From positions 226,888 to 290,887 of IMG/VR virus record IMGVR_UViG_3300042540_001399: 64,000 nucleotides of DNA. The stretch is one strand, 5' to 3'. The stretch's first letter is position 1; each line of letters starts with the position of its first letter. The notes under the pieces are model-generated. The model had not been told where the DNA came from, did not search any database, and saw only the letters and a program-made list of their open reading frames with translations. Made by a program: the position numbers and the translations under genes. Of this stretch, positions 206 to 35,466 are shown in pieces.

Positions 206-277
206 GGTCGGTTCATCTAGGGGTCAGGATACAAGGTTTTCATCCTTGTCACACGGGTTCGAATCCCGTACCGACTA
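206..277 (+). tRNA. tRNA-Glu(TTC)
   Basis: Acceptor GGTCGGT/ACCGACT, anticodon arm CAAGG-TTTTCAT-CCTTG, T arm ACGGG-TTCGAAT-CCCGT; CCA not encoded. Confidence 0.93.
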
Positions 278-302
278 CAAACCTGTCAAGGTAGTACAGG
301 AA

Positions 303-418
303 GGTCAGGAGTGTAATGAGGCACGGTGCCAAGTCCTAAAGACACCACGGTCCAAGAGCAATTTGGACGCGAGAAGTTATAAGGTTGCTCATTGTAGGTT
401 CGAATCCTACCCTGACTT
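303..418 (+). ncRNA. Atypical tRNA-like RNA (116 nt) with enlarged central region
   Basis: Acceptor GGTCAGG/CCTGACT and canonical T arm GTAGG-TTCGAAT-CCTAC; no canonical 7-nt anticodon loop; ~47-nt extra region. Confidence 0.6.
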
Positions 419-420
419 CA

Positions 421-525
421 CGGTTCGGATCATCACCGAATAGTATGCCCAATACGATGAGAAATGAGGTGATACCTCATATGGGACTTCTGATAGATAA
501 AGGATCTATTCGGTTTGACTAACCG
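421..525 (+). ncRNA. Putative structured RNA between tRNA genes
   Basis: ACCGAATAG(435-443)/CTATTCGGT(506-514) perfect 9-bp pairing, internal ATGAGGT-GAT-ACCTCAT hairpin, outer CGGTT/AACCG. Confidence 0.35.
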
Positions 526-574
526 CGGGAAATATCAAAGAGGGTTGAAGAACTACGTACCCTCGAGTCCAATT

Positions 575-649
575 GGTCCATTGGTGTAGTGGCTAACATT
601 CATCCCTGTCACGGATGAGCCGCGAGTTCGATTCTCGCATGGACCGCCA
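575..649 (+). tRNA. tRNA-Asp(GTC)
   Basis: Acceptor GGTCCAT/ATGGACC, anticodon arm CATCC-CTGTCAC-GGATG, T loop TTCGATT, encoded CCA. Confidence 0.95.
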
Positions 650-671
650 AACTTATTAAAAATTAACCATT

Positions 672-941
672 ATGAAAACTTTTCAAGACTTGGAATTTAT
701 AAAAATAAATGATGCACCGTTTATGGTTGGTAAAAAATCCCGTATGCATTTTGATAATGGGTTCGGTGTATCTGTTGTATCACACTCTTATTCATATGGG
801 GGTCGTGATGGTCTTTATGAAGTCGCGGTCCTTGACTCTGACGACAATCTTACCTACGATACTCCAATAACCAATGATGTAATGGGTTACTTAACTGAAC
901 AAGATGTTACTAATGTCATGAAACAAGTTCAAGAGCTATAA
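672..941 (+). CDS. Hypothetical phage protein (89 aa)
   Basis: Clean ATG ORF with A-rich leader; no recognised motif. Confidence 0.7.
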   Translation: MKTFQDLEFIKINDAPFMVGKKSRMHFDNGFGVSVVSHSYSYGGRDGLYEVAVLDSDDNLTYDTPITNDVMGYLTEQDVTNVMKQVQEL

Positions 942-1026
942 AAGATGACAGTTTTTTTATTCATAACATTTTTAACGACACTTTTTTTGTTGAGAAAAAA
1001 AAGAAAGTTTTAAGTAGATAAAAAAA

Positions 1027-1100
1027 GGTCTCTTAGCTCATTAGGTTAGAGCAACTGACTCATAATCAGTAGGTGGTTGGTTCGATCCCAACAGGGACCA
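1027..1100 (+). tRNA. tRNA-Ile2/Met(CAT), most like the lysidine-type Ile2
   Basis: Acceptor GGTCTCT/AGGGACC, anticodon arm CTGA-CTCATAA-TCAG, overall resemblance to bacterial ileX-type tRNAs. Confidence 0.9.
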
Positions 1101-1145
1101 CAAAAGTATTGAATATTTTAAAACAGAAATTATTATTTATAATAT

Positions 1146-1219
1146 GCACCCGTAGCTCAGCTGGATAGAGCAACTGCCTTCTAAGCAGTAGGTCAATGGT
1201 TCGAATCCATTCGGGTGTA
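1146..1219 (+). tRNA. tRNA-Arg(TCT)
   Basis: Acceptor GCACCCG/CGGGTGT, anticodon arm ACTGC-CTTCTAA-GCAGT, T loop TTCGAAT. Confidence 0.95.
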
Positions 1220-1260
1220 CTTTTTTTTTATTTTTTTTTTGGAAATCAAAAAGTTTCCTG

Positions 1261-12559: not shown

Positions 12560-13490
12560 AATCAGGAAAAGACCTGAAACGTTCTTTGAAAAATAGATTA
12601 TCCGTTCAGGAAAAGTTTTGTCAGATTCTATGACAAGTAATTGGAATGAAATTTCCATCTTTGAATGATAAAGATATTGGGCCGTGTATAGTCCATAAAA
12701 TAAACTACGAAAGTAGGATAAAGTGAACCCTTAAGTGTGTTGGGTTTGCGGCTTCTTCGGGAGCTTGAGTACACAAGCGGGATACCATTTTGGCTTTAGT
12801 ATTGAGGGCAACGCTGTAAAGAATAAGGCAAAATGATTTGGCGATGTGGGTCGTCTGATTGAGGTGGGAACACCAATAGGAATAACCCGTAGGAATATTG
12901 CAAGACTCAAAGTCATCCAACTTTAATATTGCGTTTTCCAATATAATAGGTTACTTAAAACCAAGTGGAAGGACCACAAGGTAAGATGTAGAACGAGTGG
13001 TGTCGCTAACATCCTTCACTCAGGTTTACCAAAACCCGGTGATGAAGTAGTCTAAAAATATGGAGGTAGGGATATCTCACGGAGTAGTTGAGTATCGACT
13101 CGTTCAAAAGATGGGTTGGCTCGGTTGGCGGACCACTACTTCGACAATCCACGACACAAAACTTATGACTATTGAATTAAGTCCATTAATTAATACATTA
13201 AGGAAAAGTGTCCGTCAGGTTTGGATGAAAGGTGACTACATAGTAATGAGCCGTTCATTGCACACAGAGATCCCAAGTCGATGTGTAATTATCCGAAAAA
13301 CCTTTAGTCCCGCAAGGACGAGTTGGGAAGGCATTCTCGAAAAGAGTAGATTAGGATGAGAGTAATTCAAACCTTAAGGAGTGGTAAACCTAAAAGACCG
13401 TCACTGAGAAATACTTCTCAAAAGGAAGTGGATAAGAGTAGAAACAATAATGACTCTAAAGGTTCTCACACAAACGTGTAATCTCAGCGT
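12560..13490 (+). ncRNA. Large structured ncRNA, GOLLD-like
   Basis: ~0.9 kb without a credible ORF, GC-richer than flanks, bracketed by promoter and terminator; tetraloop hairpins CTAC-GAAA-GTAG (12705-12716) and GCTTC-TTCG-GGAGC (12751-12764); long-range pairs GGAGTAG/CTACTTC (13081/13136) and CTGAGA/TCTCAG (13404/13482); boundaries approximate. Confidence 0.65.
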
Positions 13491-15051: not shown

Positions 15052-15442
15052 TGGTGGAGGCGGAGGGACTCGAACCCTCGTCCATAATATCCTGTCAGAT
15101 AAGGACTACATGTTTAGGTTGATATTTTCTAATATCCCAAAATAGTTGATTTGTTCTTCACCATCGTAAATCAACAACCAATGGTCCCGAATCGGATTTA
15201 GAGAGCCATCCGGTGTGCTCTATCAAACTACGACTTCTGTTGCTAGGTTATATGTCTGCCGACCCCCCGTTTCCGTAAACTTCTTAAGCTACAGTAACTT
15301 CAGAACCTCTTACTAATCCAAGAGTTTCCATTTTGTTTAGCACATTGCCAGTTGTTTTCTAAGTCAGTTTTTAAAGAGATTAACTCAGTCCCTACATGCC
15401 CTTATTCTTCAGCCAATACCTGTCAAATCCAAAAACGCCCCC
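15052..15442 (-). ncRNA. ssrA: tmRNA
   Basis: 5' GGGGGCGTTTTTGGATTTGACAGG; 3' GAGGGTTCGAGTCCCTCCGCCTCCACCA; G3.U70 wobble in the acceptor stem; internal tag ORF 15349-15284. Confidence 0.93.
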
Positions 15443-15534
15443 ATATTTTCAATGAACTTTTAATATAAATATTATAAGTACAAATATAAGTACTATTTTA
15501 ATTATATCCAAATTTGGGTATATTTATTTTTAAG

Positions 15535-16614
15535 ATGTCTGAACACAGTGAAATATACGATTTTTTGAAAAAAGTTTCCAAAGGTGACACATCATTTATG
15601 CCATATAGTAGATGGAATTTACCTTACCCAATTTATGATATAAAGTATAACAGCCAATCACCAGCGTCAAGTGTTATTTGGATTGAATTTGAAAATACCG
15701 AAAAATATTTAAATGCCTTAGGGATCGATGATGATGAAGATATATTTGTTTGGAATAGATTTATGGAAAATTACTATTATGACGATTATGATTACTACCG
15801 TTATGAAGAAGATTGGAAAGAAGGTTATATTATAAAAGATTTCAATCCTGAAAACATCCGATTAGTTGAAAATATACTTATGTTATCTAATCCTTCATTA
15901 AGTCTAGATATTAATAATGATGAAAGTTGTTCTAATGTTTCCTTGTATTTGTCAAGAAGATTTGATGATATTGATTACATTATTAGTGAATTTGGTAATC
16001 TAAATGAAGATTGTAAACGAAGAGCGGTAGTTGACGTTTTAGATAATGAAACTAAAAATCCATTTCGTAAATTTGGTATCACTGAAATTTATAAAAGACA
16101 CAGATTCAAAACTACTGTTAATGTGTTATTACATTGGTATAACGTAATTGACAATAAAGAATTAGACCTAATTGAATTATTACAAGAACTACTGAAAAAA
16201 TTTGATAATGAAAGTAGAGGTAATTGGTATGAGTTAGAATATAATGTTTGGTGTGATGATTTTGACAATGAATCGTTTCAAAAGGAAACAAAAAGAAACT
16301 TAGAAAAAATTATAGAAAATTTGGAAGAAAGTATTGAAGGAAAGGTTGATCTTGAAACAATAAATTCCTTATATAATAAAGTCATAAGTTTGGGTGGGTT
16401 TGGTAGATGGATTAATATTAAAGAAAAGAAAGCTGAAGTTAACTTTAGAGATTTGGATACTAAAAAAGGGATACTAAAATTTTACTATAGAAGCCCACAA
16501 ACCGGAAAGGCAACTGAAGAAAGGTCTGTCAAAAATTTGGAAGAACTCAACTTATCACTTTATCAACCTGAGCTTTTTGAGCATGTAAAAAAAATCAAGA
16601 AAATTATATTGTAA
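15535..16614 (+). CDS. Hypothetical acidic protein
   Basis: Long ORF; ATG 15535 chosen because TATTTAT lies at 15521. Confidence 0.7.
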   Translation: MSEHSEIYDFLKKVSKGDTSFMPYSRWNLPYPIYDIKYNSQSPASSVIWIEFENTEKYLNALGIDDDEDIFVWNRFMENYYYDDYDYYRYEEDWKEGYIIKDFNPENIRLVENILMLSNPSLSLDINNDESCSNVSLYLSRRFDDIDYIISEFGNLNEDCKRRAVVDVLDNETKNPFRKFGITEIYKRHRFKTTVNVLLHWYNVIDNKELDLIELLQELLKKFDNESRGNWYELEYNVWCDDFDNESFQKETKRNLEKIIENLEESIEGKVDLETINSLYNKVISLGGFGRWINIKEKKAEVNFRDLDTKKGILKFYYRSPQTGKATEERSVKNLEELNLSLYQPELFEHVKKIKKIIL

Positions 16615-16643
16615 TTGTTAATTAATTTTCATAAATTTGTATA

Positions 16644-17429
16644 ATGGAAAGAAATTATAATTTACTCAAAGAAGTTTTGTCGGTGCCGTCTAAGACTTAT
16701 CAAGAAGATTTGTTAATACAATTTATTTGTGATTGGTTGGACCAAAACAATTTTGATTACTTTGTTGATGATTTATATAATATTTATGTAACTAAACAAA
16801 CTGATGAATCTGTTGAGTTTTTTCCTTGTGTAGTTGCACACACAGATACTGTACACAACATAGATAAAATAAATGTAAAAGAAGAAATGTTACCTGACGC
16901 CCAAGGTAATGTAAAACTTTCTTTAAAAGCTTATAATGACGAAGGTAATCCTACAGGTATTGGTGGTGATGATAAGTGTGGTGTTTATGCTTGTTTAGAA
17001 TTATTGAAAGAAATACCCAATTTAAAAGCTGCTTTTTTTGTGGCTGAAGAAACGGGATGTAAAGGGTCTTTCAATGCGGATCCAAATTTCTTTTCAAATG
17101 TTGGTTATGTAATTCAATTTGATGCTCCCGAAAACAACATGATTTCAGAATTCCTTATGAACAGACCAATGTTTGATAGAAATAGTGAATTTTTTAATGT
17201 TGGTGGTAAATTAATTACTGAACATTTTCCAAGTGACACAAAATATCACAAACATCCTTACACGGACATTTATCCTTTGAACCAAAAATTTGGTATGTCA
17301 TGTTTTAATGTTTCCATAGGTTACTACAATTACCACACAAAAAACGAATATGTTGTCGTAGATGACACCTATAATGGAATCAAGGTTGGTAAGTTAATGA
17401 TTGAAGAATTAGGTTGTACTAAACATTAA
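16644..17429 (+). CDS. M28/M20-family zinc metallopeptidase
   Basis: AHTDTVH, GGDDKCG, AEETG and FDAP metal/catalytic motifs. Confidence 0.85.
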   Translation: MERNYNLLKEVLSVPSKTYQEDLLIQFICDWLDQNNFDYFVDDLYNIYVTKQTDESVEFFPCVVAHTDTVHNIDKINVKEEMLPDAQGNVKLSLKAYNDEGNPTGIGGDDKCGVYACLELLKEIPNLKAAFFVAEETGCKGSFNADPNFFSNVGYVIQFDAPENNMISEFLMNRPMFDRNSEFFNVGGKLITEHFPSDTKYHKHPYTDIYPLNQKFGMSCFNVSIGYYNYHTKNEYVVVDDTYNGIKVGKLMIEELGCTKH

Positions 17430-17457
17430 AAAAGGAGGACTTTTAATCCTCCTTTTT
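17428..17457. terminator. Bidirectional terminator
   Basis: AAAAAAGGAGGA-CTTTTAA-TCCTCCTTTTT between convergent peptidase and clpC genes. Confidence 0.75.
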
Positions 17458-19503
17458 CTTTCTACCTTTTTTCTTGGGTTCAGGTTTAGATCTATCTTCT
17501 ATACTTATTGTTTGTGTTTCTCCTTCTCCCTCAACAAATAACATATAATCAGTTCCTTCGACAACTTCGTTTGTTAGAATTTTTTCAGAAATAAGATCTT
17601 CTATTTTATCTTGTATTGCTCTTTTTATTGGTCTTGCACCATATTGGTCATCAAACCCAACTTTTGATATGAAATCAATGACAGAATTTTCATATGAAAC
17701 TTTGTATTTCATAGATGATAATCTAGAAATGAGTTTATCAATTTCTAATTTAACAATTTTATCTATGTGATCTTTTTTAAGTGAATTAAAAATAATAACG
17801 TCATCAATTCTATTTAAAAATTCAGGTGCAAAAAACTTACTTAATTCTTTTTTAAGAATGTCTCTTTTATATTCTTCTTGGATTGCATCACTATTATTAT
17901 TTGTTTTAAAACCAACACCACTACCAAAATCCTGTAATTTCTTTACCCCAATATTTGATGTCATAATTATTAGGCAATTTTTGAAATTTATTTTTCTGCC
18001 TAATCCGTCAGTTAAATGGCCATCATCCAACAATTGAAGTAATGTGGAAAAAACATCTTTATTTGCCTTTTCAATTTCATCAAACAAAATTACAGAATAA
18101 GGTTTGTTCTTTACTTGCTCTGTTAATTGACCCCCTTCTTCATGACCAACGTATCCTGGTGGTGATCCTATCAAACGTGAAATGGTATGTTTTTCTTGAA
18201 ACTCACTCATATCTACCCTAATTAAACTATCTTCACTACCAAATATTTCTTTTGCCAATTGTTTTGCTAAAAAAGTTTTACCAACACCTGTTGATCCTAA
18301 AAATATAAAAGAACCAATTGGTCTATTTGGATCTTTTATACCTACCCTATTTCTTCTTATAGATTTAGAAATTTTACCTACAGCTTCTTCCTGTCCAATT
18401 ACATTTTTATTTAATGTTGTTTCAAGATTGACTAAAGAATTTTTTTCATCAATGTTTATTTTACTAACAGGAATTTTAGTCATGTTGGACACAACTTCGT
18501 AAATTAGTTCTTCAGGTATACCCCTTTTACTATTTTTAAGGTCTTCTTCAAATTTCTTTTTTTCTTCTTCAAGTTTTAAGAGAATACTTCTTTCACGATC
18601 CCTAAGTTCTGCCGCTTGTTCATAATTTTGTTTTTTTATGACATTAAGTTTTTCTTGTTTAATTTCTTGGGCTTCTATTTTCAATTTTTCAATTGACTCG
18701 GGTAGTTTAATATCTATTTGCATTCGTGACCCAACCTCATCTAAAATATCAAAAGCTTTATCTGGAAATTCCCGATCGGTAATATATCTATCCGCTAGCT
18801 CAACACATAACCAAAGTGAATCATCAGTGTAATTAACTTTGTGATGTTCTTCATACTTCGATTTACTTTGTTTCAGAATTTCAAAAGTTTCTTCTTTTGT
18901 TGATGGATCTACAATAATTTTTTGAAACCGTCTTTCTAAAGCCCCATCTTTTTCGAAATGTTTTCTATACTCATCTAAAGTGGTTGCTCCAATACACTGT
19001 ATTTCACCTCTTGAAAGTGCTGGTTTAAATATGTTTGATGCATCCAAAGAACCCGAGCTATTACCGGCACCAACCATAGTGTGAATTTCGTCGATAAAAA
19101 GAATAATGTTAGGCGTGTTTTGAAGTTCTTCTATTATAACTTTCATTCTTTCTTCAAACTGACCTCTATATTTTGTTCCAGCAACAATAGAATTTATATC
19201 TAAGGAAACTATCCTTTTATCTACTAAATTTTTTGGACAATCGCCACTATAAATCATCATTGCCAAACCTTCTGCAATTGCCGTTTTACCTGCACCTGGT
19301 TCTCCAATAATAATAGGATTATTTTTCTTTCTTCTTGAAAGAACTTGAGCAATCCTAAAAATTTCTTTTTCTCTACCAATTACTGGATCTAATTTACCTT
19401 GTTCGGCAAGTTTAATTAAATCTTTACTAAAATTGTCTAAAACAGGCGTTCCACCATCTGTCTTTTTTTTGTTTTTTTCATTATCATCTACAAAATCTAA
19501 CAT
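17443..19503 (-). CDS. clpC: ClpC-type Hsp100 AAA+ ATPase lacking the N-terminal Clp-repeat domain
   Basis: Walker A motifs GEPGAGKT and GSTGVGKT, IDEIH, FDEIEKA, UVR middle domain (KQNYEQAAELRDRE), FAPEFLNRID, GARPIKR; begins directly at the first ATPase domain. Confidence 0.9.
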   Translation of the reverse strand: MLDFVDDNEKNKKKTDGGTPVLDNFSKDLIKLAEQGKLDPVIGREKEIFRIAQVLSRRKKNNPIIIGEPGAGKTAIAEGLAMMIYSGDCPKNLVDKRIVSLDINSIVAGTKYRGQFEERMKVIIEELQNTPNIILFIDEIHTMVGAGNSSGSLDASNIFKPALSRGEIQCIGATTLDEYRKHFEKDGALERRFQKIIVDPSTKEETFEILKQSKSKYEEHHKVNYTDDSLWLCVELADRYITDREFPDKAFDILDEVGSRMQIDIKLPESIEKLKIEAQEIKQEKLNVIKKQNYEQAAELRDRERSILLKLEEEKKKFEEDLKNSKRGIPEELIYEVVSNMTKIPVSKINIDEKNSLVNLETTLNKNVIGQEEAVGKISKSIRRNRVGIKDPNRPIGSFIFLGSTGVGKTFLAKQLAKEIFGSEDSLIRVDMSEFQEKHTISRLIGSPPGYVGHEEGGQLTEQVKNKPYSVILFDEIEKANKDVFSTLLQLLDDGHLTDGLGRKINFKNCLIIMTSNIGVKKLQDFGSGVGFKTNNNSDAIQEEYKRDILKKELSKFFAPEFLNRIDDVIIFNSLKKDHIDKIVKLEIDKLISRLSSMKYKVSYENSVIDFISKVGFDDQYGARPIKRAIQDKIEDLISEKILTNEVVEGTDYMLFVEGEGETQTISIEDRSKPEPKKKGRKKKED

Positions 19504-19662
19504 ATATAAAATTTTATTTTAAAAGTAATTATAAGAAAAGTACTAGTCAATACTTGTCTTTTTGTCAGGTTCTTTTAGTATTATATGACAAAATGTCATA
19601 GTTTAAACTTTGGCATATTTTTAATGTTAAAAAAATAAAATAAACTTATAAAAAATAAAAAA

Positions 19663-20040
19663 ATGTTTAATTGGAATAAATTTGACAAACTTTTTAATGA
19701 AATGTTTAATTCTTCTTTTGATGGGTTTTCTTTTGATGAAAATAAATGGCAAAAAAGAACCTATAAATCACCAGATGGAAGTATTTCTATGACTTACTTC
19801 ACTCATTCACCTAAAGTAAGTAATCAATCTAATGAAATAGAATTACTTAAACAAAAACTTGATTTGGCGGTTGAAGAACAAAACTTTGAAGATGCCGTAA
19901 AATTACGTGATGAAATTAAAAATTTGGAAATTAATCAAGAAAAAATTTCAGAACTAAAAAATAAATTAGATGAATGTGTAAAAAATCAAGATTTTGAAAG
20001 TGCTATAGAATATAGGGATCAAATAAAAAGCTTGAAATAA
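19663..20040 (+). CDS. Protein with two UVR (UvrB/UvrC) coiled-coil motifs, McsA C-terminus-like
   Basis: LKQKLDLAVEEQNFEDAVKLRDEIK and LKNKLDECVKNQDFESAIEYRDQIK. Confidence 0.8.
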   Translation: MFNWNKFDKLFNEMFNSSFDGFSFDENKWQKRTYKSPDGSISMTYFTHSPKVSNQSNEIELLKQKLDLAVEEQNFEDAVKLRDEIKNLEINQEKISELKNKLDECVKNQDFESAIEYRDQIKSLK

Positions 20041-20043
20041 ATT

Positions 20044-20066
20044 ATCCACCGAAAGGTGGATTTTTT
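20044..20066 (+). terminator. Rho-independent terminator
   Basis: ATCCACC-GAAA-GGTGGAT followed by T tract. Confidence 0.8.
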
Positions 20067-20098
20067 ATTTATATCAATTATTTTAATTAAAAAAAATT

Positions 20099-20341
20099 AT
20101 GGCAATACTAAAAGAAGAAATAATAGGAACAAAAATCATAAATGAAATCCAATCATCAAATTTAGTTAAAACAGAGTATGATGTTGAGACTAAAAAATTA
20201 ATTGCTGAATTCAAAAACGGTATTAAGTATGTTTATGAAGATGTACCACATCAAAAATATACAGAATTCAGAATGGCGCCATCCCAAGGAACTTACTTTA
20301 ACAAAAACATTTCAAAGGTTTTCAAATATTCAAAAGTGTAA
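20099..20341 (+). CDS. KTSC-domain protein
   Basis: SSNL...YD.....L..EFKNG..Y.Y.DVP...Y..F..APSQGTYFNKNI pattern. Confidence 0.85.
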   Translation: MAILKEEIIGTKIINEIQSSNLVKTEYDVETKKLIAEFKNGIKYVYEDVPHQKYTEFRMAPSQGTYFNKNISKVFKYSKV

Positions 20342-21174: not shown

Positions 21175-22491
21175 ATGGGAGGACTAAAACCTATTGGAAG
21201 CGAAAAATTAGGTGGTATGGATAAAATCCGCAGAATTATGGAAATTGCTAACTACAATCATCAACTACCTAATAATAATGTTGAATTGAAATCTACTGAA
21301 TATAGACTAGGTTTAGCTGATGGTAATTCTTATGAAATTGTAAAAGAAAGACAAGGATATATCATTAAAAGAAATATTACTGAATCATATTCTGATTATA
21401 TGGAACCTATGAAAAATAGAAGATATTATAGGTCATATTCTGAAGCTCTTAAGAAATTAAATTTGATGGCCAAGGAATTTAATGCTATTTATGAAAATGA
21501 AGAAGGTACGAACTTATTTAGTGAACAAAAAAAGTTCAAATTAAAAGTTCCAAAACCTAAGTCAGATGTTGCTCCTGAAGCAGCACCAACATTACCTGAA
21601 CCAGCGCCGGCAGAACCTGCTCCAGCAACACCCGCAACACCATCGGAACCGACAACTCCAAGTGCAGAAAGTCCTGAAGGTTCAACAGATGCGTCAATGG
21701 GACCTGAATCAGGTGGCGAATTAGATGATTTATTAGGTTCCACAGGTGATGAAGAGCCAACAGGTGATGAAGAACCAACAGGTGATGAAGAACCAACAGG
21801 TGATGAAAAAGAATCTGGTGTATCTTTCAAATTAATTCAAAAACTTACAGGTAAACTATCACAAAAGATAAGAAAATATCTCAATAATGAAGAAATGGAT
21901 TCTGATGATGTAAAATATGTTTTGAATTCAATTTTGTCCGCTTTAGATTTGTCTGTTTTAAATGATGAAGATGTTGAAGAAATAATTGATAGATTAGAAG
22001 GTGACGATGAAGAAGAAGGTGATGAAGATATGGGTGATGAAGATATGGGTGATGAAGGTGACGAGTCAACTGAACCTCCTGTTGAAAGTCCTGAACCACC
22101 TACAGGCGAAGAAGGTGAAGTGACAGAATATGGATATAGAAACAGAAATAGGATTAAAGTAGGACCTTTGGGTGTAAGAACAGAAAATATGTTTTCAGAA
22201 TCCAAAGTGGATAGAATAATTGGAAATTATTTCAATGTTAGCGAAGAAGAAGAAAAAGAGTTAAAAATAAAAAAATCAATAAACGAAGAACTTATTAGAG
22301 AAAATGTTATGGTAAACGAAATGGAAATCAAAAGACTTTCATCAAGTATAGAACAACAAAGATCGGCTTTGAGGTTTTTGGAAAAAAACCCAAACGCAAC
22401 TTTAATAGGGTCAACTAACAAGAAAAATTTACTTTTCAAAGTAGGGTTAAAAGAACATAAGATTTCGGTTCACGGTAAAAGAATTTTATGA
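21175..22491 (+). CDS. Acidic, Pro-rich putative head/prohead protein
   Basis: Low-complexity P/E/D centre; position just before the head module; TATTTAT at 21134. Confidence 0.6.
   Translation: MGGLKPIGSEKLGGMDKIRRIMEIANYNHQLPNNNVELKSTEYRLGLADGNSYEIVKERQGYIIKRNITESYSDYMEPMKNRRYYRSYSEALKKLNLMAKEFNAIYENEEGTNLFSEQKKFKLKVPKPKSDVAPEAAPTLPEPAPAEPAPATPATPSEPTTPSAESPEGSTDASMGPESGGELDDLLGSTGDEEPTGDEEPTGDEEPTGDEKESGVSFKLIQKLTGKLSQKIRKYLNNEEMDSDDVKYVLNSILSALDLSVLNDEDVEEIIDRLEGDDEEEGDEDMGDEDMGDEGDESTEPPVESPEPPTGEEGEVTEYGYRNRNRIKVGPLGVRTENMFSESKVDRIIGNYFNVSEEEEKELKIKKSINEELIRENVMVNEMEIKRLSSSIEQQRSALRFLEKNPNATLIGSTNKKNLLFKVGLKEHKISVHGKRIL
21742..21807 (+). repeat. 18-nt in-frame tandem repeat (TGDEEP, ~3.7 copies)
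   Basis: ACAGGTGATGAAGARCCA units at 21742, 21760, 21778 and partial at 21796. Confidence 0.85.
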
Positions 22492-25346: not shown

Positions 25347-27119
25347 ATGAGTCTAACAAAAGAACAAGTCATGTTAGAATATGTTAGGTGTATGAAAGAT
25401 ACTGAATATGCACTCAAAACATATTTACAAACATACGATAATACTGTTTCTAAGTACGTACCCTTACAACTTTTTCCCGATCAAGTATCATTATTAAAAG
25501 ACTATGAAGATTATGAAGAAAATATAGCCCTGAAATATAGACAGGCTGGGGTATCAACAGTTACTGCCGCTTGGGTGTCAAAACGACTAGTTTTTGCAAA
25601 AAAAAATCAACCCGAAAAAATATTGATCATTGCGAACAAATTAGACACCTCAATGGAAATGGCAAACAAAATAAGGGCATTTGTTGATCAGTGGCCATCT
25701 TGGGTAGGGGCCGGATTTTCGGTAGACAAAAACTCTCAAAAACATTACAAACTTATTAATGGTAGTGAAGTAAAGGCTGTTGCGACTTCTAAAGATGCTT
25801 TGAGGGGTTTTACACCAACAATACTTGTGTTTGATGAGGCGGCATTTATTGAAGCCGATAGTGACTTTTGGGCTGCTTGTATGGCTTCATTATCAACAGG
25901 TGGTAAAGTTATAGTAGTTTCGACCCCTAACGGATACGACCCAATTTATTATGATGTTTATAACCAAGCAGTTAAAGGAATCAACAACTTTAAAATTTCT
26001 GAAATGTATTGGTGGAGAGATCCGAGATACGCCAAAGATTTATATCTTGTACCTACAGATGACTTAGTTCATTATCTATTGAATAAAGATCAACAGGATG
26101 AATCTAAACATATATCCTTTGCCCATGTAGATCCTTATGAAAGAAACTACGATGAAATATCCAATTATTTCAAAGATGGGTACAAACCATGTTCAACTTG
26201 GTATGAACGTATGGTGAAAAAATTAAAGTATGACAAAAGAAAAATTAACCAAGAGTTAAATTGTGAATTTTTGGGATCAGGTGACAACGTTTTTGACAAT
26301 AAACAATTAGAAGATATAAAAAATAACACCTTATGTGATCCTTCAGGAAAAATGATGGGGAATTCACTTTGGGTTTGGAAAGATCCTATTTTGGGACATA
26401 GATACATAATGGGTGTTGACGTATCAAGAGGTGATAGTGAAGACTTCAGTTCGATACAAATCATAGATTTTGATTCAAGGGAACAGGTCTTTGAATACGT
26501 AGGAAAAATACCTCCCGATGCTTTGGCAGAAATAGCCTACAAATGGGGTATTATGTATAATGCATTTATTGTTGTCGATATAACAGGAGGTATGGGAATA
26601 ACAACTGTTAGAAAACTTCAAGAATTAGGGTATAAAAGTTTGTATGTTGATGGTGTAGACACAACAAGTATATGGTCAAACACAACCAAAATGGCAGATA
26701 AAATTCCAGGAATTAATTTCAATAATAAACGAGTACAAATTATTGCGGCTTTCGAAGAAGCGGTAAGACATAAGTTTAAAATAAAAAGTGTTCGTCTATA
26801 CAACGAAATGAACACTTTTGTTTATATAAATGGTCGACCTGATCATCAAAAGGGACAACATGACGACCTTATTATGGGAATATCTATGGCAATTTATGTC
26901 GGTGAATCTTCGTTCACAAAATTAGAAAAAGTCGCACAACAAGCTAAAGTTATGTTGGAATCTTGGACTGTAGCTTCAAATGACGCAGTATCTAAGGAAG
27001 TATACTTCAATCCAGTATTACCAAATTTAAATGTTAAAAGAGATCACTTTGGTAGGGAAATAAATTCAGCAACAAGAGAAGACTATGAAAAGTATGGTTG
27101 GTTATTTGGGGGTAGGTAA
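25347..27119 (+). CDS. Terminase large subunit (T4 gp17-like)
   Basis: KYRQAGVST Walker A region, FDEAAF Walker B, VSTPNG coupling motif, nuclease GVDVSRG and HDDLIM. Confidence 0.95.
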   Translation: MSLTKEQVMLEYVRCMKDTEYALKTYLQTYDNTVSKYVPLQLFPDQVSLLKDYEDYEENIALKYRQAGVSTVTAAWVSKRLVFAKKNQPEKILIIANKLDTSMEMANKIRAFVDQWPSWVGAGFSVDKNSQKHYKLINGSEVKAVATSKDALRGFTPTILVFDEAAFIEADSDFWAACMASLSTGGKVIVVSTPNGYDPIYYDVYNQAVKGINNFKISEMYWWRDPRYAKDLYLVPTDDLVHYLLNKDQQDESKHISFAHVDPYERNYDEISNYFKDGYKPCSTWYERMVKKLKYDKRKINQELNCEFLGSGDNVFDNKQLEDIKNNTLCDPSGKMMGNSLWVWKDPILGHRYIMGVDVSRGDSEDFSSIQIIDFDSREQVFEYVGKIPPDALAEIAYKWGIMYNAFIVVDITGGMGITTVRKLQELGYKSLYVDGVDTTSIWSNTTKMADKIPGINFNNKRVQIIAAFEEAVRHKFKIKSVRLYNEMNTFVYINGRPDHQKGQHDDLIMGISMAIYVGESSFTKLEKVAQQAKVMLESWTVASNDAVSKEVYFNPVLPNLNVKRDHFGREINSATREDYEKYGWLFGGR

Positions 27120-33576: not shown

Positions 33577-35466
33577 ATGGGAGCATTATTAGAATCAGGT
33601 CTTGTTGGTAACATCGGGTTAAAACACCTAAAAGTTATCAAAGAAGATACAATTAACAAATGGGACAGATTAGGGTTCCTTGAAGGTCTTAAAGGCCACC
33701 TAAAAGAAAACGTAGCACAGTTATATGAAAACCAAGCTTCTTTCTTGATTAACGAAGCAACTTCAGAAACTTCTAACGGAGCTTTTGAAACAGTTGTATT
33801 CCCTATCGTAAGAAGAGTTTTTTCTAAATTGTTAGCAAACGATATCGTATCAGTACAAGCAATGAACTTACCTATTGGTAAATTGTTCTACTTCGTACCT
33901 CGTATCCAAGGATACAATCCTAACGCGGCAAATCCTGATGGGACACACTATTCACCAATAGGATCACCTCAAGCAATTGCAGATGGTTACAACTCACTTG
34001 GTCAAGGTTACCCTAACGCTAATTTACCTGCTGGTCAGACTAACGCACCATATACAAAAAATCTTTATGATTTATTTTATGAAGGTAATGAGGCAGGTTT
34101 AGATCCTCCAGGATTGTTTGACTATTCTAAAGGTCAATGGACTGCAGTTACTCAACCGGCTATCGCTATGGTATGGTCAGGTTCTGATTTAACTCCAGCG
34201 ACAAATCAATTTGACGGTGAAGTTACAAGAAAAATTATCGTTAAACTTTGTGGATTTAATAACGGAGGTGTTGGTAAATTAATCGGACCTGATGGTAATG
34301 AGATAGATACAGAAACTTTCTTATCTGATCTTAAAATTGTTGCTGACTTAAACGTATTAACAGGATCTACAGGATGTCCTAATTTAGATGAGATTGGAAA
34401 CACAAACTTGTCAGCACCATTATTGTTTAGAGTTGTAACTCAAATTTATGGTAAAGGAATTGTACAACCAACATCTAATACTCAAGGAACAACTTTCCCT
34501 ACAACAGGAAATGGTGGGTCTTACAACAATATCTGTTCACAGGATGGTTGTATCTATTTAGAAGTTGATCTTTCTTGTCCAGCATGTGCTGATTGTGGAG
34601 CTACTACATTAGATGGTTACACAGGAACTACAATTGGTGAAATAACAGAAAATAATGATACATTAGGACAATCTCCATTCCAAGCAATTTATAGAAGATA
34701 TAAAAACTTAGAATTCGAAGATCAAATTGGTGAGGTTTCTTTTGATCTTGAGTCAGTGACTGTTTCTGTAACAGAAAGAAAATTAAGAGCACAATGGTCA
34801 CCTGAATTAGCTCAGGACGTTGCAGCATTCCATAACATCGATGCAGAAGCTGAATTGACAGCGTTGTTGTCAGAACAAGTAGCTGCTGAAATCGATCGTG
34901 AAATTTTACGTGACTTGAGAAAAGGAGCGGCATGGAATTTACGTTGGGACTACAACGGATGGAGAAGACTTCAATTGACTACATCTTATACACAAAAAGA
35001 TTGGAACCAAACTTTGATCACAGCGATCAATCAATTGTCAGCACAAATCCACAAATCTACTTTGAGAGGTGGTGCTAACTGGATCGTTGTTTCTTCTGAA
35101 GTTTCTGCAATCTTTGATGATCTTGAATACTTCCACGTATCAAATGCTTCACCAGAGCAAGATCAATACAACATGGGTATCGAAAGAGTAGGTACGTTGT
35201 CAGGACGTTACCAAGTTTACCGTGATCCTTACTTCCCGCCTAACCAAGTGTTAATCGGTCACAAAGGAACATCATTGTTAGACACAGGTTACATTTACGC
35301 ACCGTATGTACCTCTACAATTGACACCTACAATGTATAACCCATTCAACTTCACACCTATCAAAGGTATTATGACAAGATACGCTAAGAAAATGGTTAAC
35401 AACCGTTTCTACGGACGTATCACAGTTGATGGTGTTAGAACGTTTGACTTAAGAGAATTGAGATAA
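33577..35466 (+). CDS. Major capsid protein (T4 gp23-like)
   Basis: ANDIVSVQAMNLPIGKLFY, RKLRAQWSPELAQDV.AFHNIDAEAELTALLSEQVAAEIDREI, GYIYAPYVPL, GIMTRYA. Confidence 0.96.
   Translation: MGALLESGLVGNIGLKHLKVIKEDTINKWDRLGFLEGLKGHLKENVAQLYENQASFLINEATSETSNGAFETVVFPIVRRVFSKLLANDIVSVQAMNLPIGKLFYFVPRIQGYNPNAANPDGTHYSPIGSPQAIADGYNSLGQGYPNANLPAGQTNAPYTKNLYDLFYEGNEAGLDPPGLFDYSKGQWTAVTQPAIAMVWSGSDLTPATNQFDGEVTRKIIVKLCGFNNGGVGKLIGPDGNEIDTETFLSDLKIVADLNVLTGSTGCPNLDEIGNTNLSAPLLFRVVTQIYGKGIVQPTSNTQGTTFPTTGNGGSYNNICSQDGCIYLEVDLSCPACADCGATTLDGYTGTTIGEITENNDTLGQSPFQAIYRRYKNLEFEDQIGEVSFDLESVTVSVTERKLRAQWSPELAQDVAAFHNIDAEAELTALLSEQVAAEIDREILRDLRKGAAWNLRWDYNGWRRLQLTTSYTQKDWNQTLITAINQLSAQIHKSTLRGGANWIVVSSEVSAIFDDLEYFHVSNASPEQDQYNMGIERVGTLSGRYQVYRDPYFPPNQVLIGHKGTSLLDTGYIYAPYVPLQLTPTMYNPFNFTPIKGIMTRYAKKMVNNRFYGRITVDGVRTFDLRELR

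What the first reader, a model, noticed from the sequence alone, without database searches (positions are those of the whole stretch)
15052..20341. Phage proteostasis module: tmRNA, peptidase, N-domain-less ClpC and divergent double-UVR protein
Seen: the ClpC starts directly at the first AAA domain, lacking the Clp-repeat N-domain that binds adaptors and pArg, but keeps the UVR M-domain. A 125-aa protein with two UVR motifs is transcribed divergently. No clpP gene is in this window. Established: UVR coiled coils of McsA/MecA-type partners contact the ClpC M-domain and control its activation. Inference: a dedicated phage adaptor-unfoldase pair that hijacks host ClpP or works as a disaggregase or capsid-assembly chaperone, possibly handling tmRNA-tagged substrates.
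Basis: partly seen in the sequence, partly recalled or inferred. Interest (0 to 1): 0.65.

Follow-up and report, generated by a model that had tools for sequence, protein, structure and literature searches.

The report
Jumbo-phage ClpC island lacking N-domain
A 291-kb freshwater phage that probably infects Bacteroidota carries a conserved gene block made of its own tmRNA with an unusual 21-residue tag, a peptidase, and a ClpC unfoldase that has lost its regulatory N-domain, with a swappable slot next to the unfoldase that here holds a small double-UVR protein; this offers a natural test case for how such unfoldases are switched on.

Summary
They are a tmRNA (15052-15442, minus strand), an M20-type peptidase, a 686-aa ClpC that begins in the linker before the first AAA ring, and a divergent 125-aa protein with two UVR motifs.

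No ClpP, Clp_N, SmpB, McsB or MecA is found in the whole 291-kb genome, which is 99% complete.

The block tmRNA / orphan protein / peptidase / clpC / slot / KTSC is conserved across at least 80 related freshwater jumbo-phage contigs. The lineage fits the published 'moraphages', whose predicted hosts are Bacteroidota.

- **ClpC:** it derives from Bacteroidota ClpC (55-60% identity; the host copies keep the N-domain). It keeps every ATPase motif, the M-domain tip aromatic and the ClpP-docking GVGF loop, so docking on host ClpP is the likeliest mode.
- **UVR gene:** wherever it occurs it sits next to clpC. It is present in only 38 of 80 relatives. In the others the slot holds an Hsp20, a DnaK or nothing, mostly behind the same conserved palindrome. 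It is therefore an accessory modulator, not an obligate adaptor.
- **Proposed role:** it mimics the M-domain tip and frees active hexamers, as the F436A mutation does in laboratory ΔN-ClpC. This is inferred; the complex prediction gave no verdict.
- **tmRNA tag:** GNVLNKMETLGLVRGSEVTVA is under clear peptide-level selection.

Verdict: new variant of a known kind.

The parts
15052..15442 (-). tmRNA (one-piece, standard type).
   Evidence: Rfam RF00023, 114 bits, model positions 1-374. Present at the same place and strand relative to clpC in 67 of 80 related loci, which is every locus long enough to reach it. Confirmed by Rfam in 10 of 10 loci tested.
15284..15349 (-). Tag reading frame of the tmRNA. 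The resume codon is GGC, followed by 21 codons and TAA, giving (A)GNVLNKMETLGLVRGSEVTVA.
   Evidence: The Rfam alignment places the consensus resume codon on this GGC. Among 25 distinct 21-codon versions, residues G1 V3 K6 G11 R14 V20 A21 are invariant while their codons vary (Val GTG/GTT/GTA/GTC; Arg AGA/CGT/CGC). Bacteroidota tags GENNYALAA and GDNRFALAA also resume at GGC, at the same position.
15514..16614 (+). Conserved orphan protein (366 aa from TTG; 359 aa from the first ATG at 15535).
   Evidence: Syntenic between the tmRNA and the peptidase in most of the related loci (69 of 80). No Pfam or PHROG family. The AF2 model has pLDDT 89, but there is no fold relative and no Atlas lead.
16644..17429 (+). 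M20-type (clan MH) metallopeptidase, catalytic domain only.
   Evidence: phrog_4191 E 4e-35 and Pfam M20 E 3e-5. PepD/PepT are the nearest solved structures, and the HxD, GxDD and EE motifs align. Syntenic in 77 of 80 loci.
17428..17458 (.). 14-bp hairpin between the convergent peptidase and clpC genes; a likely two-way terminator.
   Evidence: Consensus scan.
17443..19503 (-). ClpC-type double-ring AAA+ unfoldase without the N-domain.
   Evidence: Both Walker A/B pairs and both pore loops (KYRG, GYVG) are visible in the translation. All 80 relatives are 624-719 aa by ORF call, most of them 670-710, and start in the same linker. Bacteroidota homologues are 825-895 aa, with 164-217 extra N-terminal residues.
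18499..18720 (-). M-domain (about residues 262-335), a single coiled coil with a UVR motif. Its tip aromatic Y294 corresponds to S. aureus F436.
   Evidence: Alignment to 6em9. The tip is Y or F in every phage copy, whatever the slot holds.
17905..17928 (-). ClpP-docking loop FGSGVGFK (residues 526-533).
   Evidence: G531 and F532 are invariant in 25 of 25 aligned copies. The loop type is kept in 80 of 80 phage and 25 of 25 Bacteroidota copies.
19555..19598 (.). Two copies of a TGACA-N3-TGTCA palindrome in the clpC/slot spacer. The copy at 19586-19598 is perfect. The copy at 19555-19567 is degenerate here but near-perfect in relatives.
   Evidence: Conserved upstream of clpC in relatives whether the slot gene is UVR, Hsp20 or DnaK, and lost where KTSC abuts clpC. 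Six perfect copies occur in the genome against 0.1 expected. It overlaps a sigma70-like match on the clpC strand.
19663..20040 (+). 125-aa slot protein: N-terminal helix and beta-hairpin (about residues 1-50), then two UVR helical hairpins (about residues 57-90 and 93-125).
   Evidence: Pfam UVR E 8e-21, two stretches. AF2 model pLDDT 70. The family has only 58 clusters, all metagenomic. It always lies divergent from an N-less clpC.
20044..20061 (+). Hairpin plus T-run directly after the UVR gene, which makes it a self-contained cassette.
20099..20341 (+). KTSC-domain protein, the conserved flank of the slot.
   Evidence: Pfam KTSC E 2.5e-16. Found in 79 of 80 loci.

Best explanation
**What it is.** The block is a conserved protein-turnover island of a freshwater jumbo-phage lineage that probably infects Bacteroidota.

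**The unfoldase.** Its core is a ClpC captured from the host phylum and stripped of the N-domain. That domain carries adaptor, phospho-arginine and resting-state control. The ATPase rings, the M-domain and the ClpP-docking loop are intact, and the phage has no ClpP. The unfoldase therefore most likely caps host ClpP, giving the phage a protease outside host N-domain control (inferred).

**The need for a release factor.** Laboratory ΔN-ClpC binds ClpP but locks into inert head-to-head ring dimers through its M-domain tips. It becomes an adaptor-free degrader of tmRNA-tagged protein once that tip contact is broken (shown for S. aureus ClpC).

**The slot protein.** The neighbouring cassette slot shares a palindromic operator with clpC and holds accessory factors. 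In this genome it holds a 125-aa protein whose two UVR hairpins resemble the M-domain tip. I propose that it caps M-domain tips and releases active hexamers (inferred, untested). Because it is absent in half of the relatives, it tunes the machine rather than enabling it.

**The other parts.** The phage tmRNA uses host SmpB and adds a lineage-specific 21-residue tag. The M20 peptidase could trim the released peptides. A functional link between these parts and ClpC rests on conserved adjacency only.
For: **Shown**
- The domain make-up of ClpC and loss of the N-domain.
- The invariant GVGF loop.
- No ClpP, SmpB, McsB or MecA in a 99%-complete genome, while the control Bacteroides genome has ClpP and SmpB.
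- The nearest cellular homologues are all Bacteroidota and all carry the N-domain.
- The block is conserved in 80 loci.
- The UVR gene is found only beside an N-less clpC, including members at 41-48% identity.
- The shared conserved palindrome.
- The UVR motifs align better to ClpC's own M-domain (35% over 46 aa, pairwise E 0.001) than to the phage UvrC motif (E 0.24).
- The M-domain tip aromatic is kept in all copies.
- The tag is under peptide-level selection.

**From the literature**
- ΔN-ClpC binds ClpP and forms M-domain-mediated rods that block proteolysis. ΔN plus F436A degrades GFP-SsrA without an adaptor (PMC12583610).
- UVR-domain proteins are selectively trapped on plastid CLPC1 (PMC8889267).
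- A phage protein that modulates ClpC is known: SPO1 Gp53 (PMC6873191).
Against: - There is no direct evidence that the two proteins touch. The only complex job gave no verdict.
- 42 of 80 relatives lack the UVR gene, including two complete genomes, yet keep the same ClpC with the same M-domain tip. Either the tip contact is not limiting in these proteins or something else relieves it.
- The slot's alternative occupants, Hsp20 and DnaK, are classic disaggregation partners and point as much to a ClpP-independent chaperone role.
- The adjacent head and packaging genes fit an assembly role.
- The tag ends in VA, not LAA, and nothing shows which protease reads it.
- Behaviour of S. aureus ΔN-ClpC may not carry over to a Bacteroidota-type ClpC.
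Confidence: 0.4

Rival explanations
1. ClpC works without ClpP as a stand-alone unfoldase or disaggregase, or as an assembly chaperone for the very large virion. The slot genes (UVR protein, Hsp20, DnaK) and the phage J-protein are its chaperone partners. In this reading the UVR protein is a holdase or co-chaperone, not a switch.
For: - The slot alternates with Hsp20 and DnaK.
- The genome has a J-domain protein.
- TerL and the major head protein lie 6-14 kb downstream.
- The N-terminus of the UVR protein weakly resembles the N-terminus of the Hsp20 that replaces it (hhalign pairwise E 0.0056 but probability only 6.6%).
- ClpL shows that a ClpC-like ATPase can be an autonomous disaggregase (PMC11006417, listed).
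Against: The ClpP-docking GVGF loop is invariant across 80 phage copies. Pure disaggregases (ClpB, Hsp104, ClpL) lack this loop (established knowledge; the engineered BAP chimera 5ofo appears). A peptidase and a tmRNA are fixed neighbours, which fits degradation better than refolding.
Confidence: 0.27
2. The UVR protein targets the HOST ClpC rather than the phage copy. As a decoy for the nearly identical host M-domain tip, it would break or lock the host resting state and so deregulate or silence host ClpC during infection.
For: Host-type M-domain tips (KQKYEEAAKLRD) are very close to the phage tip (KQNYEQAAELRD). Phage proteins that act on host ClpC exist (SPO1 Gp53, PMC6873191). Deregulated ClpC is toxic (PMC12583610 abstract).
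Against: The gene is never found apart from the phage clpC, and it shares clpC's operator. That is more easily explained by a shared job. The two targets are not mutually exclusive.
Confidence: 0.12
3. Adjacency is not functional. The UVR protein acts in DNA repair through the canonical UvrB-UvrC type UVR contact, for example with the phage UvrC-like protein or host UvrB.
For: The UVR motif was defined by the UvrB-UvrC interaction (established knowledge). The genome encodes a UvrC-like protein with a UVR motif at C1:145588-146862.
Against: Strict linkage to clpC holds in every occurrence. The slot is shared with chaperones under one operator. Similarity to the UvrC motif is weaker than to the ClpC M-domain. 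Complete relatives G001 and G002 showed no UvrC-type UVR hit at all.
Confidence: 0.06

Closest known systems
Laboratory ΔN-ClpC of Staphylococcus aureus (Jenne et al., EMBO J 2025, PMC12583610)
   Same: The truncation point is nearly identical: the phage protein aligns from S. aureus residue 153, and the laboratory construct keeps the linker from residue 147. The M-domain with its tip aromatic and the ClpP loop are retained.
   Different: The phage version is natural, about 53% identical by eye over the alignment (not computed), and of Bacteroidota descent. It has been conserved for a long time in a phage clade, so it is presumably active in vivo. The laboratory ΔN protein alone is proteolytically inert.
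Bacteroidota ClpC (cellular, about 840-880 aa)
   Same: It is the closest homologue (55-60% identity), with the same M-domain length, the same GVGF loop and a similar basic C-terminal tail.
   Different: The cellular proteins keep about 165-215 N-terminal residues, comprising the Clp_N repeats and an acidic linker.
McsA (protein-arginine kinase activator); JGI's automatic name for several family members
   Same: Both contain a UVR-type helical hairpin. There is a local structural resemblance to the McsA coiled coil in 8wtb (rmsd 2.5 Å over 50 residues, not significant).
   Different: The phage protein has no zinc-coordinating CxxC domains (a single Cys in 125 aa), there is no McsB in the genome, and it has two UVR hairpins instead of one. 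It is not McsA.
Plastid UVR-domain partners of CLPC1 (ClpF, EXE1/2, UVR2-4; PMC8889267)
   Same: These are small or modular UVR-motif proteins associated with a ClpC-type unfoldase that itself carries a UVR motif.
   Different: They have other accompanying domains (YccV, DUF151 and others). ClpF is reported to use the ClpC N-domain (own knowledge), which is absent here. No sequence relationship exists beyond the motif.
SPO1 Gp53, a phage-encoded adaptor-like modulator of B. subtilis ClpCP (PMC6873191)
   Same: It is a small phage protein proposed to reprogramme a ClpC protease.
   Different: Gp53 acts on the host's full-length ClpC and is unrelated in sequence. Here the phage also brings its own unfoldase.
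'Moraphages' (Perez-Hernandez et al., Arch Virol 2025, PMC12619734)
   Same: They are freshwater phages of 200-307 kb with predicted Bacteroidota hosts. Their near-core genes include a 'ClpA' ATPase (VOG02072) and a 'putative peptidase'. Some members have DnaK, DnaJ and HSP20. This genome and its relatives show the same pattern.
   Different: The paper lists the genes but does not describe the missing N-domain, the UVR protein, the variable slot, the tmRNA or GOLLD (none of 'ClpC', 'tmRNA' occur in its text). Membership of this genome in that lineage could not be tested directly.
Phage tmRNAs (mycobacteriophages of the Bxz1 group, Bacillus phage G; huge phages of Al-Shayeb 2020)
   Same: tmRNA genes in large phage genomes are already known (PMC4131195; PMC7162821).
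   Different: Here the tag is twice the usual length, ends in VA instead of LAA, differs from the putative host phylum's tags while keeping their GGC resume codon, and is conserved across a whole clade.

Membership tests
ClpC (class I Hsp100 with ClpP loop) | Two AAA+ modules with Walker A/B and pore loops. | tested here: met
   Pfam AAA, AAA_lid_9, AAA_2 and ClpB_D2-small. Full-length alignment to the ClpC structures 6em9 and 3j3s. The motifs GEPGAGKT/FIDE, GSTGVGKT/LFDE, KYRG and GYVG are in the translation.
ClpC (class I Hsp100 with ClpP loop) | Short single-coiled-coil M-domain with a UVR motif, inserted in D1. | tested here: met
   UVR at residues 278-307. It aligns without a length difference to the S. 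aureus ClpC M-domain, whereas ClpB hits split into two stretches.
ClpC (class I Hsp100 with ClpP loop) | ClpP-docking loop ([VIL]G[FL]) in D2. | tested here: met
   GSGVGFK at residues 527-533, aligned to the S. aureus AGF loop. It is conserved in all copies. Actual docking was not tested.
ClpC (class I Hsp100 with ClpP loop) | N-terminal Clp_N repeat domain, the site for adaptors and phospho-arginine. | tested here: not met
   There is no Clp_N in the protein or anywhere in the genome. The ORF cannot extend upstream. The protein is therefore a ClpC derivative, not a canonical ClpC.
McsA | Two zinc-coordinating CxxC domains and a partner McsB kinase. | tested here: not met
   A single Cys in the sequence. 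No ATP-guanido phosphotransferase in the genome.
MecA-type adaptor | MecA domain that binds the ClpC N-domain and M-domain. | tested here: not met
   No PF05389 in the genome. The ClpC N-domain it would need is absent.
UVR-motif protein (PF02151) | Helical hairpin with the motif [QE]x[FY]ExAAxLRD. | tested here: met
   Two stretches, whole-protein E 8e-21. The AF2 model shows helices 54-71, 75-107 and 111-124.
tmRNA (RF00023) | tRNA-like domain with G3:U and CCA end, pseudoknots, and an internal tag ORF with a resume codon. | tested here: met
   Full-length covariance-model match above the gathering score. The tag frame is conserved at the peptide level. Charging and SmpB binding are not testable here.
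Peptidase family M20 (clan MH) | Co-catalytic metal ligands (HxD, D, EE, D/E, H). | tested here: inconclusive
   The Pfam score of 24.4 is just under the cut-off of 24.6. The HTD, GGDDKCG and AEETG motifs align with PepD. The distal ligands were not verified, and the lid domain is missing.

The most novel reading that the evidence does not exclude
The phage runs a private tag-and-destroy pathway. Its tmRNA appends a phage-specific 21-residue degron to stalled chains. The N-domain-less ClpC reads that degron through its pore, and the double-UVR protein acts as an M-domain-tip cap that switches the ClpC-host ClpP machine on. The M20 peptidase then finishes the peptides. This would be an orthogonal viral degradation system built from host parts.
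Probability: 0.12. Interest if true: 0.85.

Novelty: new variant of a known kind. Interest (0 to 1): 0.6.

Why it matters
ClpC is held off by its N-domain and M-domain, and how that brake is released is an active question and a drug-target issue. Here evolution has performed the N-domain deletion that was only recently studied at the bench, and has kept it for a long time in a large phage clade.

Next to it lies a slot that holds either an M-domain look-alike, a small heat-shock protein or an Hsp70. That gives three natural 'answers' to the same regulatory problem, and they can be compared biochemically.

The block also offers a tmRNA whose tag is clearly selected yet unlike any host tag. This could show how a virus redirects ribosome rescue.

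All parts are small and easy to express, and the candidate hosts (Flavobacteria) can be cultured.

Tried and rejected
- **Complex prediction.** ClpC(1-345) with the UVR protein, using my own alignments, gave 'no answer' (ipSAE 0.11 and 0.12 against a mark of 0.32). This is not evidence either way.
- **Fold search of the UVR protein model.** Nothing was significant. Only local, non-significant resemblance appeared to a 53-residue chain of the S. aureus MecA/ClpC entry 9goq (I did not identify which protein that chain is), to the ClpC resting state 9qqr, and to the McsA coiled coil 8wtb.
- **UVR protein as a remodelled Hsp20.** The hhalign probability is only 6.6%. I keep this as a weak lead.
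- **M-domain tip residue against slot content.** There is no correlation; the tip is Y or F everywhere.
- **Co-variation between the M-domain tip and the UVR motifs.** Nothing was visible, and the script captured only the first UVR motif of each protein.
- **Phage-database tblastn with the UVR protein.** No match.
- **Bacteroidota clpC neighbourhoods.** No small UVR-motif ORFs within 3 kb.
- **The orphan protein.** The Atlas, Foldseek and VIA searches gave no lead.
- **Other palindrome sites.** The neighbouring genes are not chaperones (5'-3' exonuclease, DnaB-like helicase, a non-coding stretch), so I could not define a 'heat-shock regulon'.
- **tmRNA near the N-less ClpC of two megaphages.** None was found within 12 kb.
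- **The large representative-protein search.** I did not run it; the family scans and the word search sufficed.


Full report
**1. What is there**

The window is the last 64 kb of a single 290,887-bp IMG/VR virus record, rated 99% complete. It is a tailed phage: the large terminase subunit (25347-27119) and the major head protein (33577-35466) are in the window.

The flagged stretch contains the following features, in order:
- A one-piece tmRNA on the minus strand at 15052-15442 (Rfam 114 bits). ARAGORN misses it.
- An orphan ORF at 15514-16614 (+).
- An M20-type metallopeptidase at 16644-17429 (+).
- A hairpin terminator between two convergent genes at 17428-17458.
- A 686-aa ClpC-type ATPase at 17443-19503 (-).
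- A 159-nt spacer.
- A 125-aa double-UVR protein at 19663-20040 (+), followed directly by its own terminator hairpin.
- A KTSC-domain gene at 20099-20341 (+).

Only the strand of the tmRNA and two further genes were left unmentioned.

**2. The unfoldase**

The protein aligns end to end with S. aureus ClpC residues 153-798 and with B. subtilis ClpC residues 156-799 (E 1e-212 to 1e-220). It begins about 18 residues before the conserved TPVLDNF motif, which puts its start inside the linker that follows the N-domain. Only five sense codons lie upstream in frame, and no Clp_N repeat exists anywhere in the genome.

Both Walker A/B pairs and both pore loops are intact. The M-domain has ClpC length, not ClpB length, and carries a UVR motif. 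The D2 loop reads GSGVGFK, aligned to the ClpP-docking loop of ClpC. G531 and F532 are invariant in 25 aligned relatives, and the loop type is kept in all 80.

The nearest cellular homologues are all Bacteroidota ClpC at 55-60% identity. The complete ones measure 825-895 aa and have 164-217 additional N-terminal residues. The gene is thus a host-phylum ClpC that lost its N-domain.

N-less copies of 701 and 657 aa also occur in the 634-kb and 484-kb 'uncultured phage' records LR745206 and LR756508. The truncation is therefore a recurrent phage trait.

**3. The lineage and the block**

At least 556 IMG/VR stretches encode relatives. I examined the best 80, at 74-100% identity. In these, the peptidase (77 of 80), the orphan ORF, KTSC (79 of 80) and a nucleotidyltransferase-like gene keep their places. 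The tmRNA is present in all 67 loci that extend far enough.

A GOLLD RNA lies convergent with the tmRNA in 9 of 10 loci tested, and in the window at 13080-13490.

Several properties match the recently named 'moraphages' (PMC12619734):
- genome size;
- Bacteroidota-like genes;
- DnaK or Hsp20 in some members;
- a near-core 'ClpA' ATPase and a 'putative peptidase'.

That paper does not mention ClpC or a tmRNA, and I saw no discussion there of a missing N-domain, a UVR protein or GOLLD.

**4. The double-UVR protein**

Pfam finds two UVR hairpins (E 8e-21). The AF2 model (pLDDT 70) shows an N-terminal helix, a beta-hairpin, and three helices that form two hairpins sharing a long central helix.

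The family is small. It has 58 clusters at 90% identity, all from metagenomes, at 41% identity or more. Every member whose context could be read lies divergent from an N-less clpC. This holds for 38 of the 80 loci, for the viral-contig hits whose flanks were read (the four that fall in the 80 loci; L089 and L090 were not inspected), and for three distant members at 44-48% identity to the window protein.

The converse does not hold, because 42 of 80 loci lack it. On the ClpC tree the gene is scattered over both deep halves and needs 9-13 gains or losses. Two 100%-complete relatives (322 and 304 kb) contain no UVR motif except the one in ClpC.

It is not McsA. It has one cysteine, no zinc fingers and no McsB partner. 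There is also no MecA.

**5. The slot**

Where the UVR gene is missing, the same position and orientation holds one of the following:
- an Hsp20 small heat-shock protein (6 loci; Pfam E 1e-13 to 1e-14);
- a 618-aa DnaK (11 loci; one more locus has DnaK plus UVR);
- an unrelated small ORF;
- nothing, with KTSC directly abutting clpC.

The window's own genome has neither Hsp20 nor DnaK, but it does have a J-domain protein elsewhere.

The spacer upstream of clpC carries two copies of TGACA-N3-TGTCA. These are conserved whether the slot gene is UVR, Hsp20 or DnaK, and they are gone where the slot is deleted outright. The perfect palindrome occurs six times in the genome against 0.1 expected. One-mismatch versions are at chance level.

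The slot is thus a cassette position for chaperone-type genes, co-regulated with clpC.

**6. The tmRNA tag**

The Rfam alignment puts the resume codon on GGC. The frame gives GNVLNKMETLGLVRGSEVTVA. In 25 distinct 21-codon versions, seven residues are invariant while their codons change (for example Arg as AGA, CGT or CGC). Three further versions have 22 codons, and all end in VA.

Flavobacterium and Saprospiraceae tmRNAs resume at GGC at the same distance from the 5' end, but they encode GENNYALAA and GDNRFALAA. The phage tmRNA therefore looks host-derived but carries a new, selected tag.

The phage has no SmpB and must rely on the host's.

**7. How it most likely works**

Jenne et al. (PMC12583610) showed the following for S. 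aureus ClpC:
- The N-domain stabilises the inactive resting state.
- ΔN-ClpC gains ClpP binding, but it assembles head-to-head through its M-domain tips into rods that cannot degrade.
- Adding the tip mutation F436A makes it an adaptor-independent degrader of SsrA-tagged GFP.

The phage protein is a natural ΔN-ClpC whose tip aromatic (Y294) is kept in all copies.

A soluble protein made of two M-domain-like hairpins is therefore a reasonable candidate to occupy those tips and free hexamers. The slot protein's motifs, QNFEDAVKLRD and QDFESAIEYRD, compare with QNYEQAAELRD in ClpC. The best pairwise alignment is to the ClpC M-domain. UVR-motif proteins are also selectively trapped on plastid CLPC1 (PMC8889267).

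This mechanism is inference. The single complex prediction returned no verdict, and half of the clade does without the gene.

The steps rank as follows:
- **Shown:** domain content, synteny, distribution, and selection on the tag.
- **Inferred from family knowledge:** ClpP docking through the GVGF loop, and escape from N-domain control.
- **Inferred from adjacency only:** any link of the tmRNA, the peptidase or the orphan ORF to ClpC.

**8. Rivals**

- **Stand-alone chaperone.** A ClpP-independent disaggregase or assembly-chaperone role is favoured by the Hsp20/DnaK alternation and by the neighbouring head genes. The invariant ClpP loop argues against it.
- **Host decoy.** The UVR protein may target host ClpC, whose tip is almost the same.
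- **DNA repair.** A role via the phage UvrC-like protein is unlikely given the strict linkage to clpC.

**9. Verdict**

- The 'proteostasis module' reading is supported and extended.
- The 'dedicated adaptor pair' reading is not supported as stated.
- Phage Clp components are known (PMC7824862). The natural ΔN-ClpC with a swappable UVR/Hsp20/DnaK slot and the clade-specific tmRNA tag is a new variant, and it is readily testable.

Noticed in passing
window 13080-13490 (+); L011-L084; L171 2535-2940: A GOLLD RNA (320 bits) lies convergent with the tmRNA here and in 9 of 10 relatives tested, sometimes only about 140 nt away. In the unrelated-size 634-kb phage LR745206, a GOLLD RNA and two tRNAs lie 2 kb from its N-less ClpC. 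GOLLD, the tmRNA or tRNAs, and ClpC seem to travel together.
   Followed up: partly
window 15514-16614 (+): This orphan protein is conserved between the tmRNA and the peptidase in most relatives (69 of 80 loci). It folds with high confidence (pLDDT 89, pTM 0.76) into a mixed alpha/beta architecture with no recognisable relative in PDB, Pfam, PHROGs or the ESM Atlas.
   Followed up: yes
genome C1:178,600-180,350 (outside the window; L175 1100-2850): A 1.7-kb stretch has almost no ORFs and a raised G+C content, with C-rich runs. It holds three perfect and one near-perfect copy of the TGACA-N3-TGTCA palindrome. It may be a regulatory or replication/packaging region that shares a DNA-binding factor with the clpC promoter.
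   Followed up: partly
genome C1:145588-146862 (L004 892-2166): A phage-encoded UvrC-like protein (GIY-YIG N-terminus, UVR motif) is the only other UVR motif in the genome.
   Followed up: partly
genome C1:108862-109038 (L185): A J-domain protein (Pfam DnaJ E 8e-24) in a 307-aa ORF. The phage has no DnaK of its own, although relatives carry one in the clpC slot.
   Followed up: no
window 206-1220: Four tRNA genes (Glu-TTC, Asp-GTC, Met-CAT, Arg-TCT) are clustered at the start of the window.
   Followed up: no
window 21175-22491 (+): A 438-aa protein has a long acidic, proline- and threonine-rich low-complexity centre (repeated DEEPTG), no family match, and a position between the ClpC block and the terminase. 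It could be a scaffold-like or internal virion protein.
   Followed up: no
L184 2802-4837: In one freshwater contig the N-less clpC is called as two ORFs (403 and 256 aa) split between D1 and D2. This could be a sequencing frameshift or a genuinely split gene.
   Followed up: no
window 19668-19710 versus L048 5493-5840: The slot's UVR protein and the Hsp20 that replaces it in other phages begin with the same N-terminal pattern (MFN..FD..F), followed by a 'TY.S/T.D/E' strand. The similarity is weak (hhalign probability 6.6%) but suggests that one may have been rebuilt from the other in place.
   Followed up: partly
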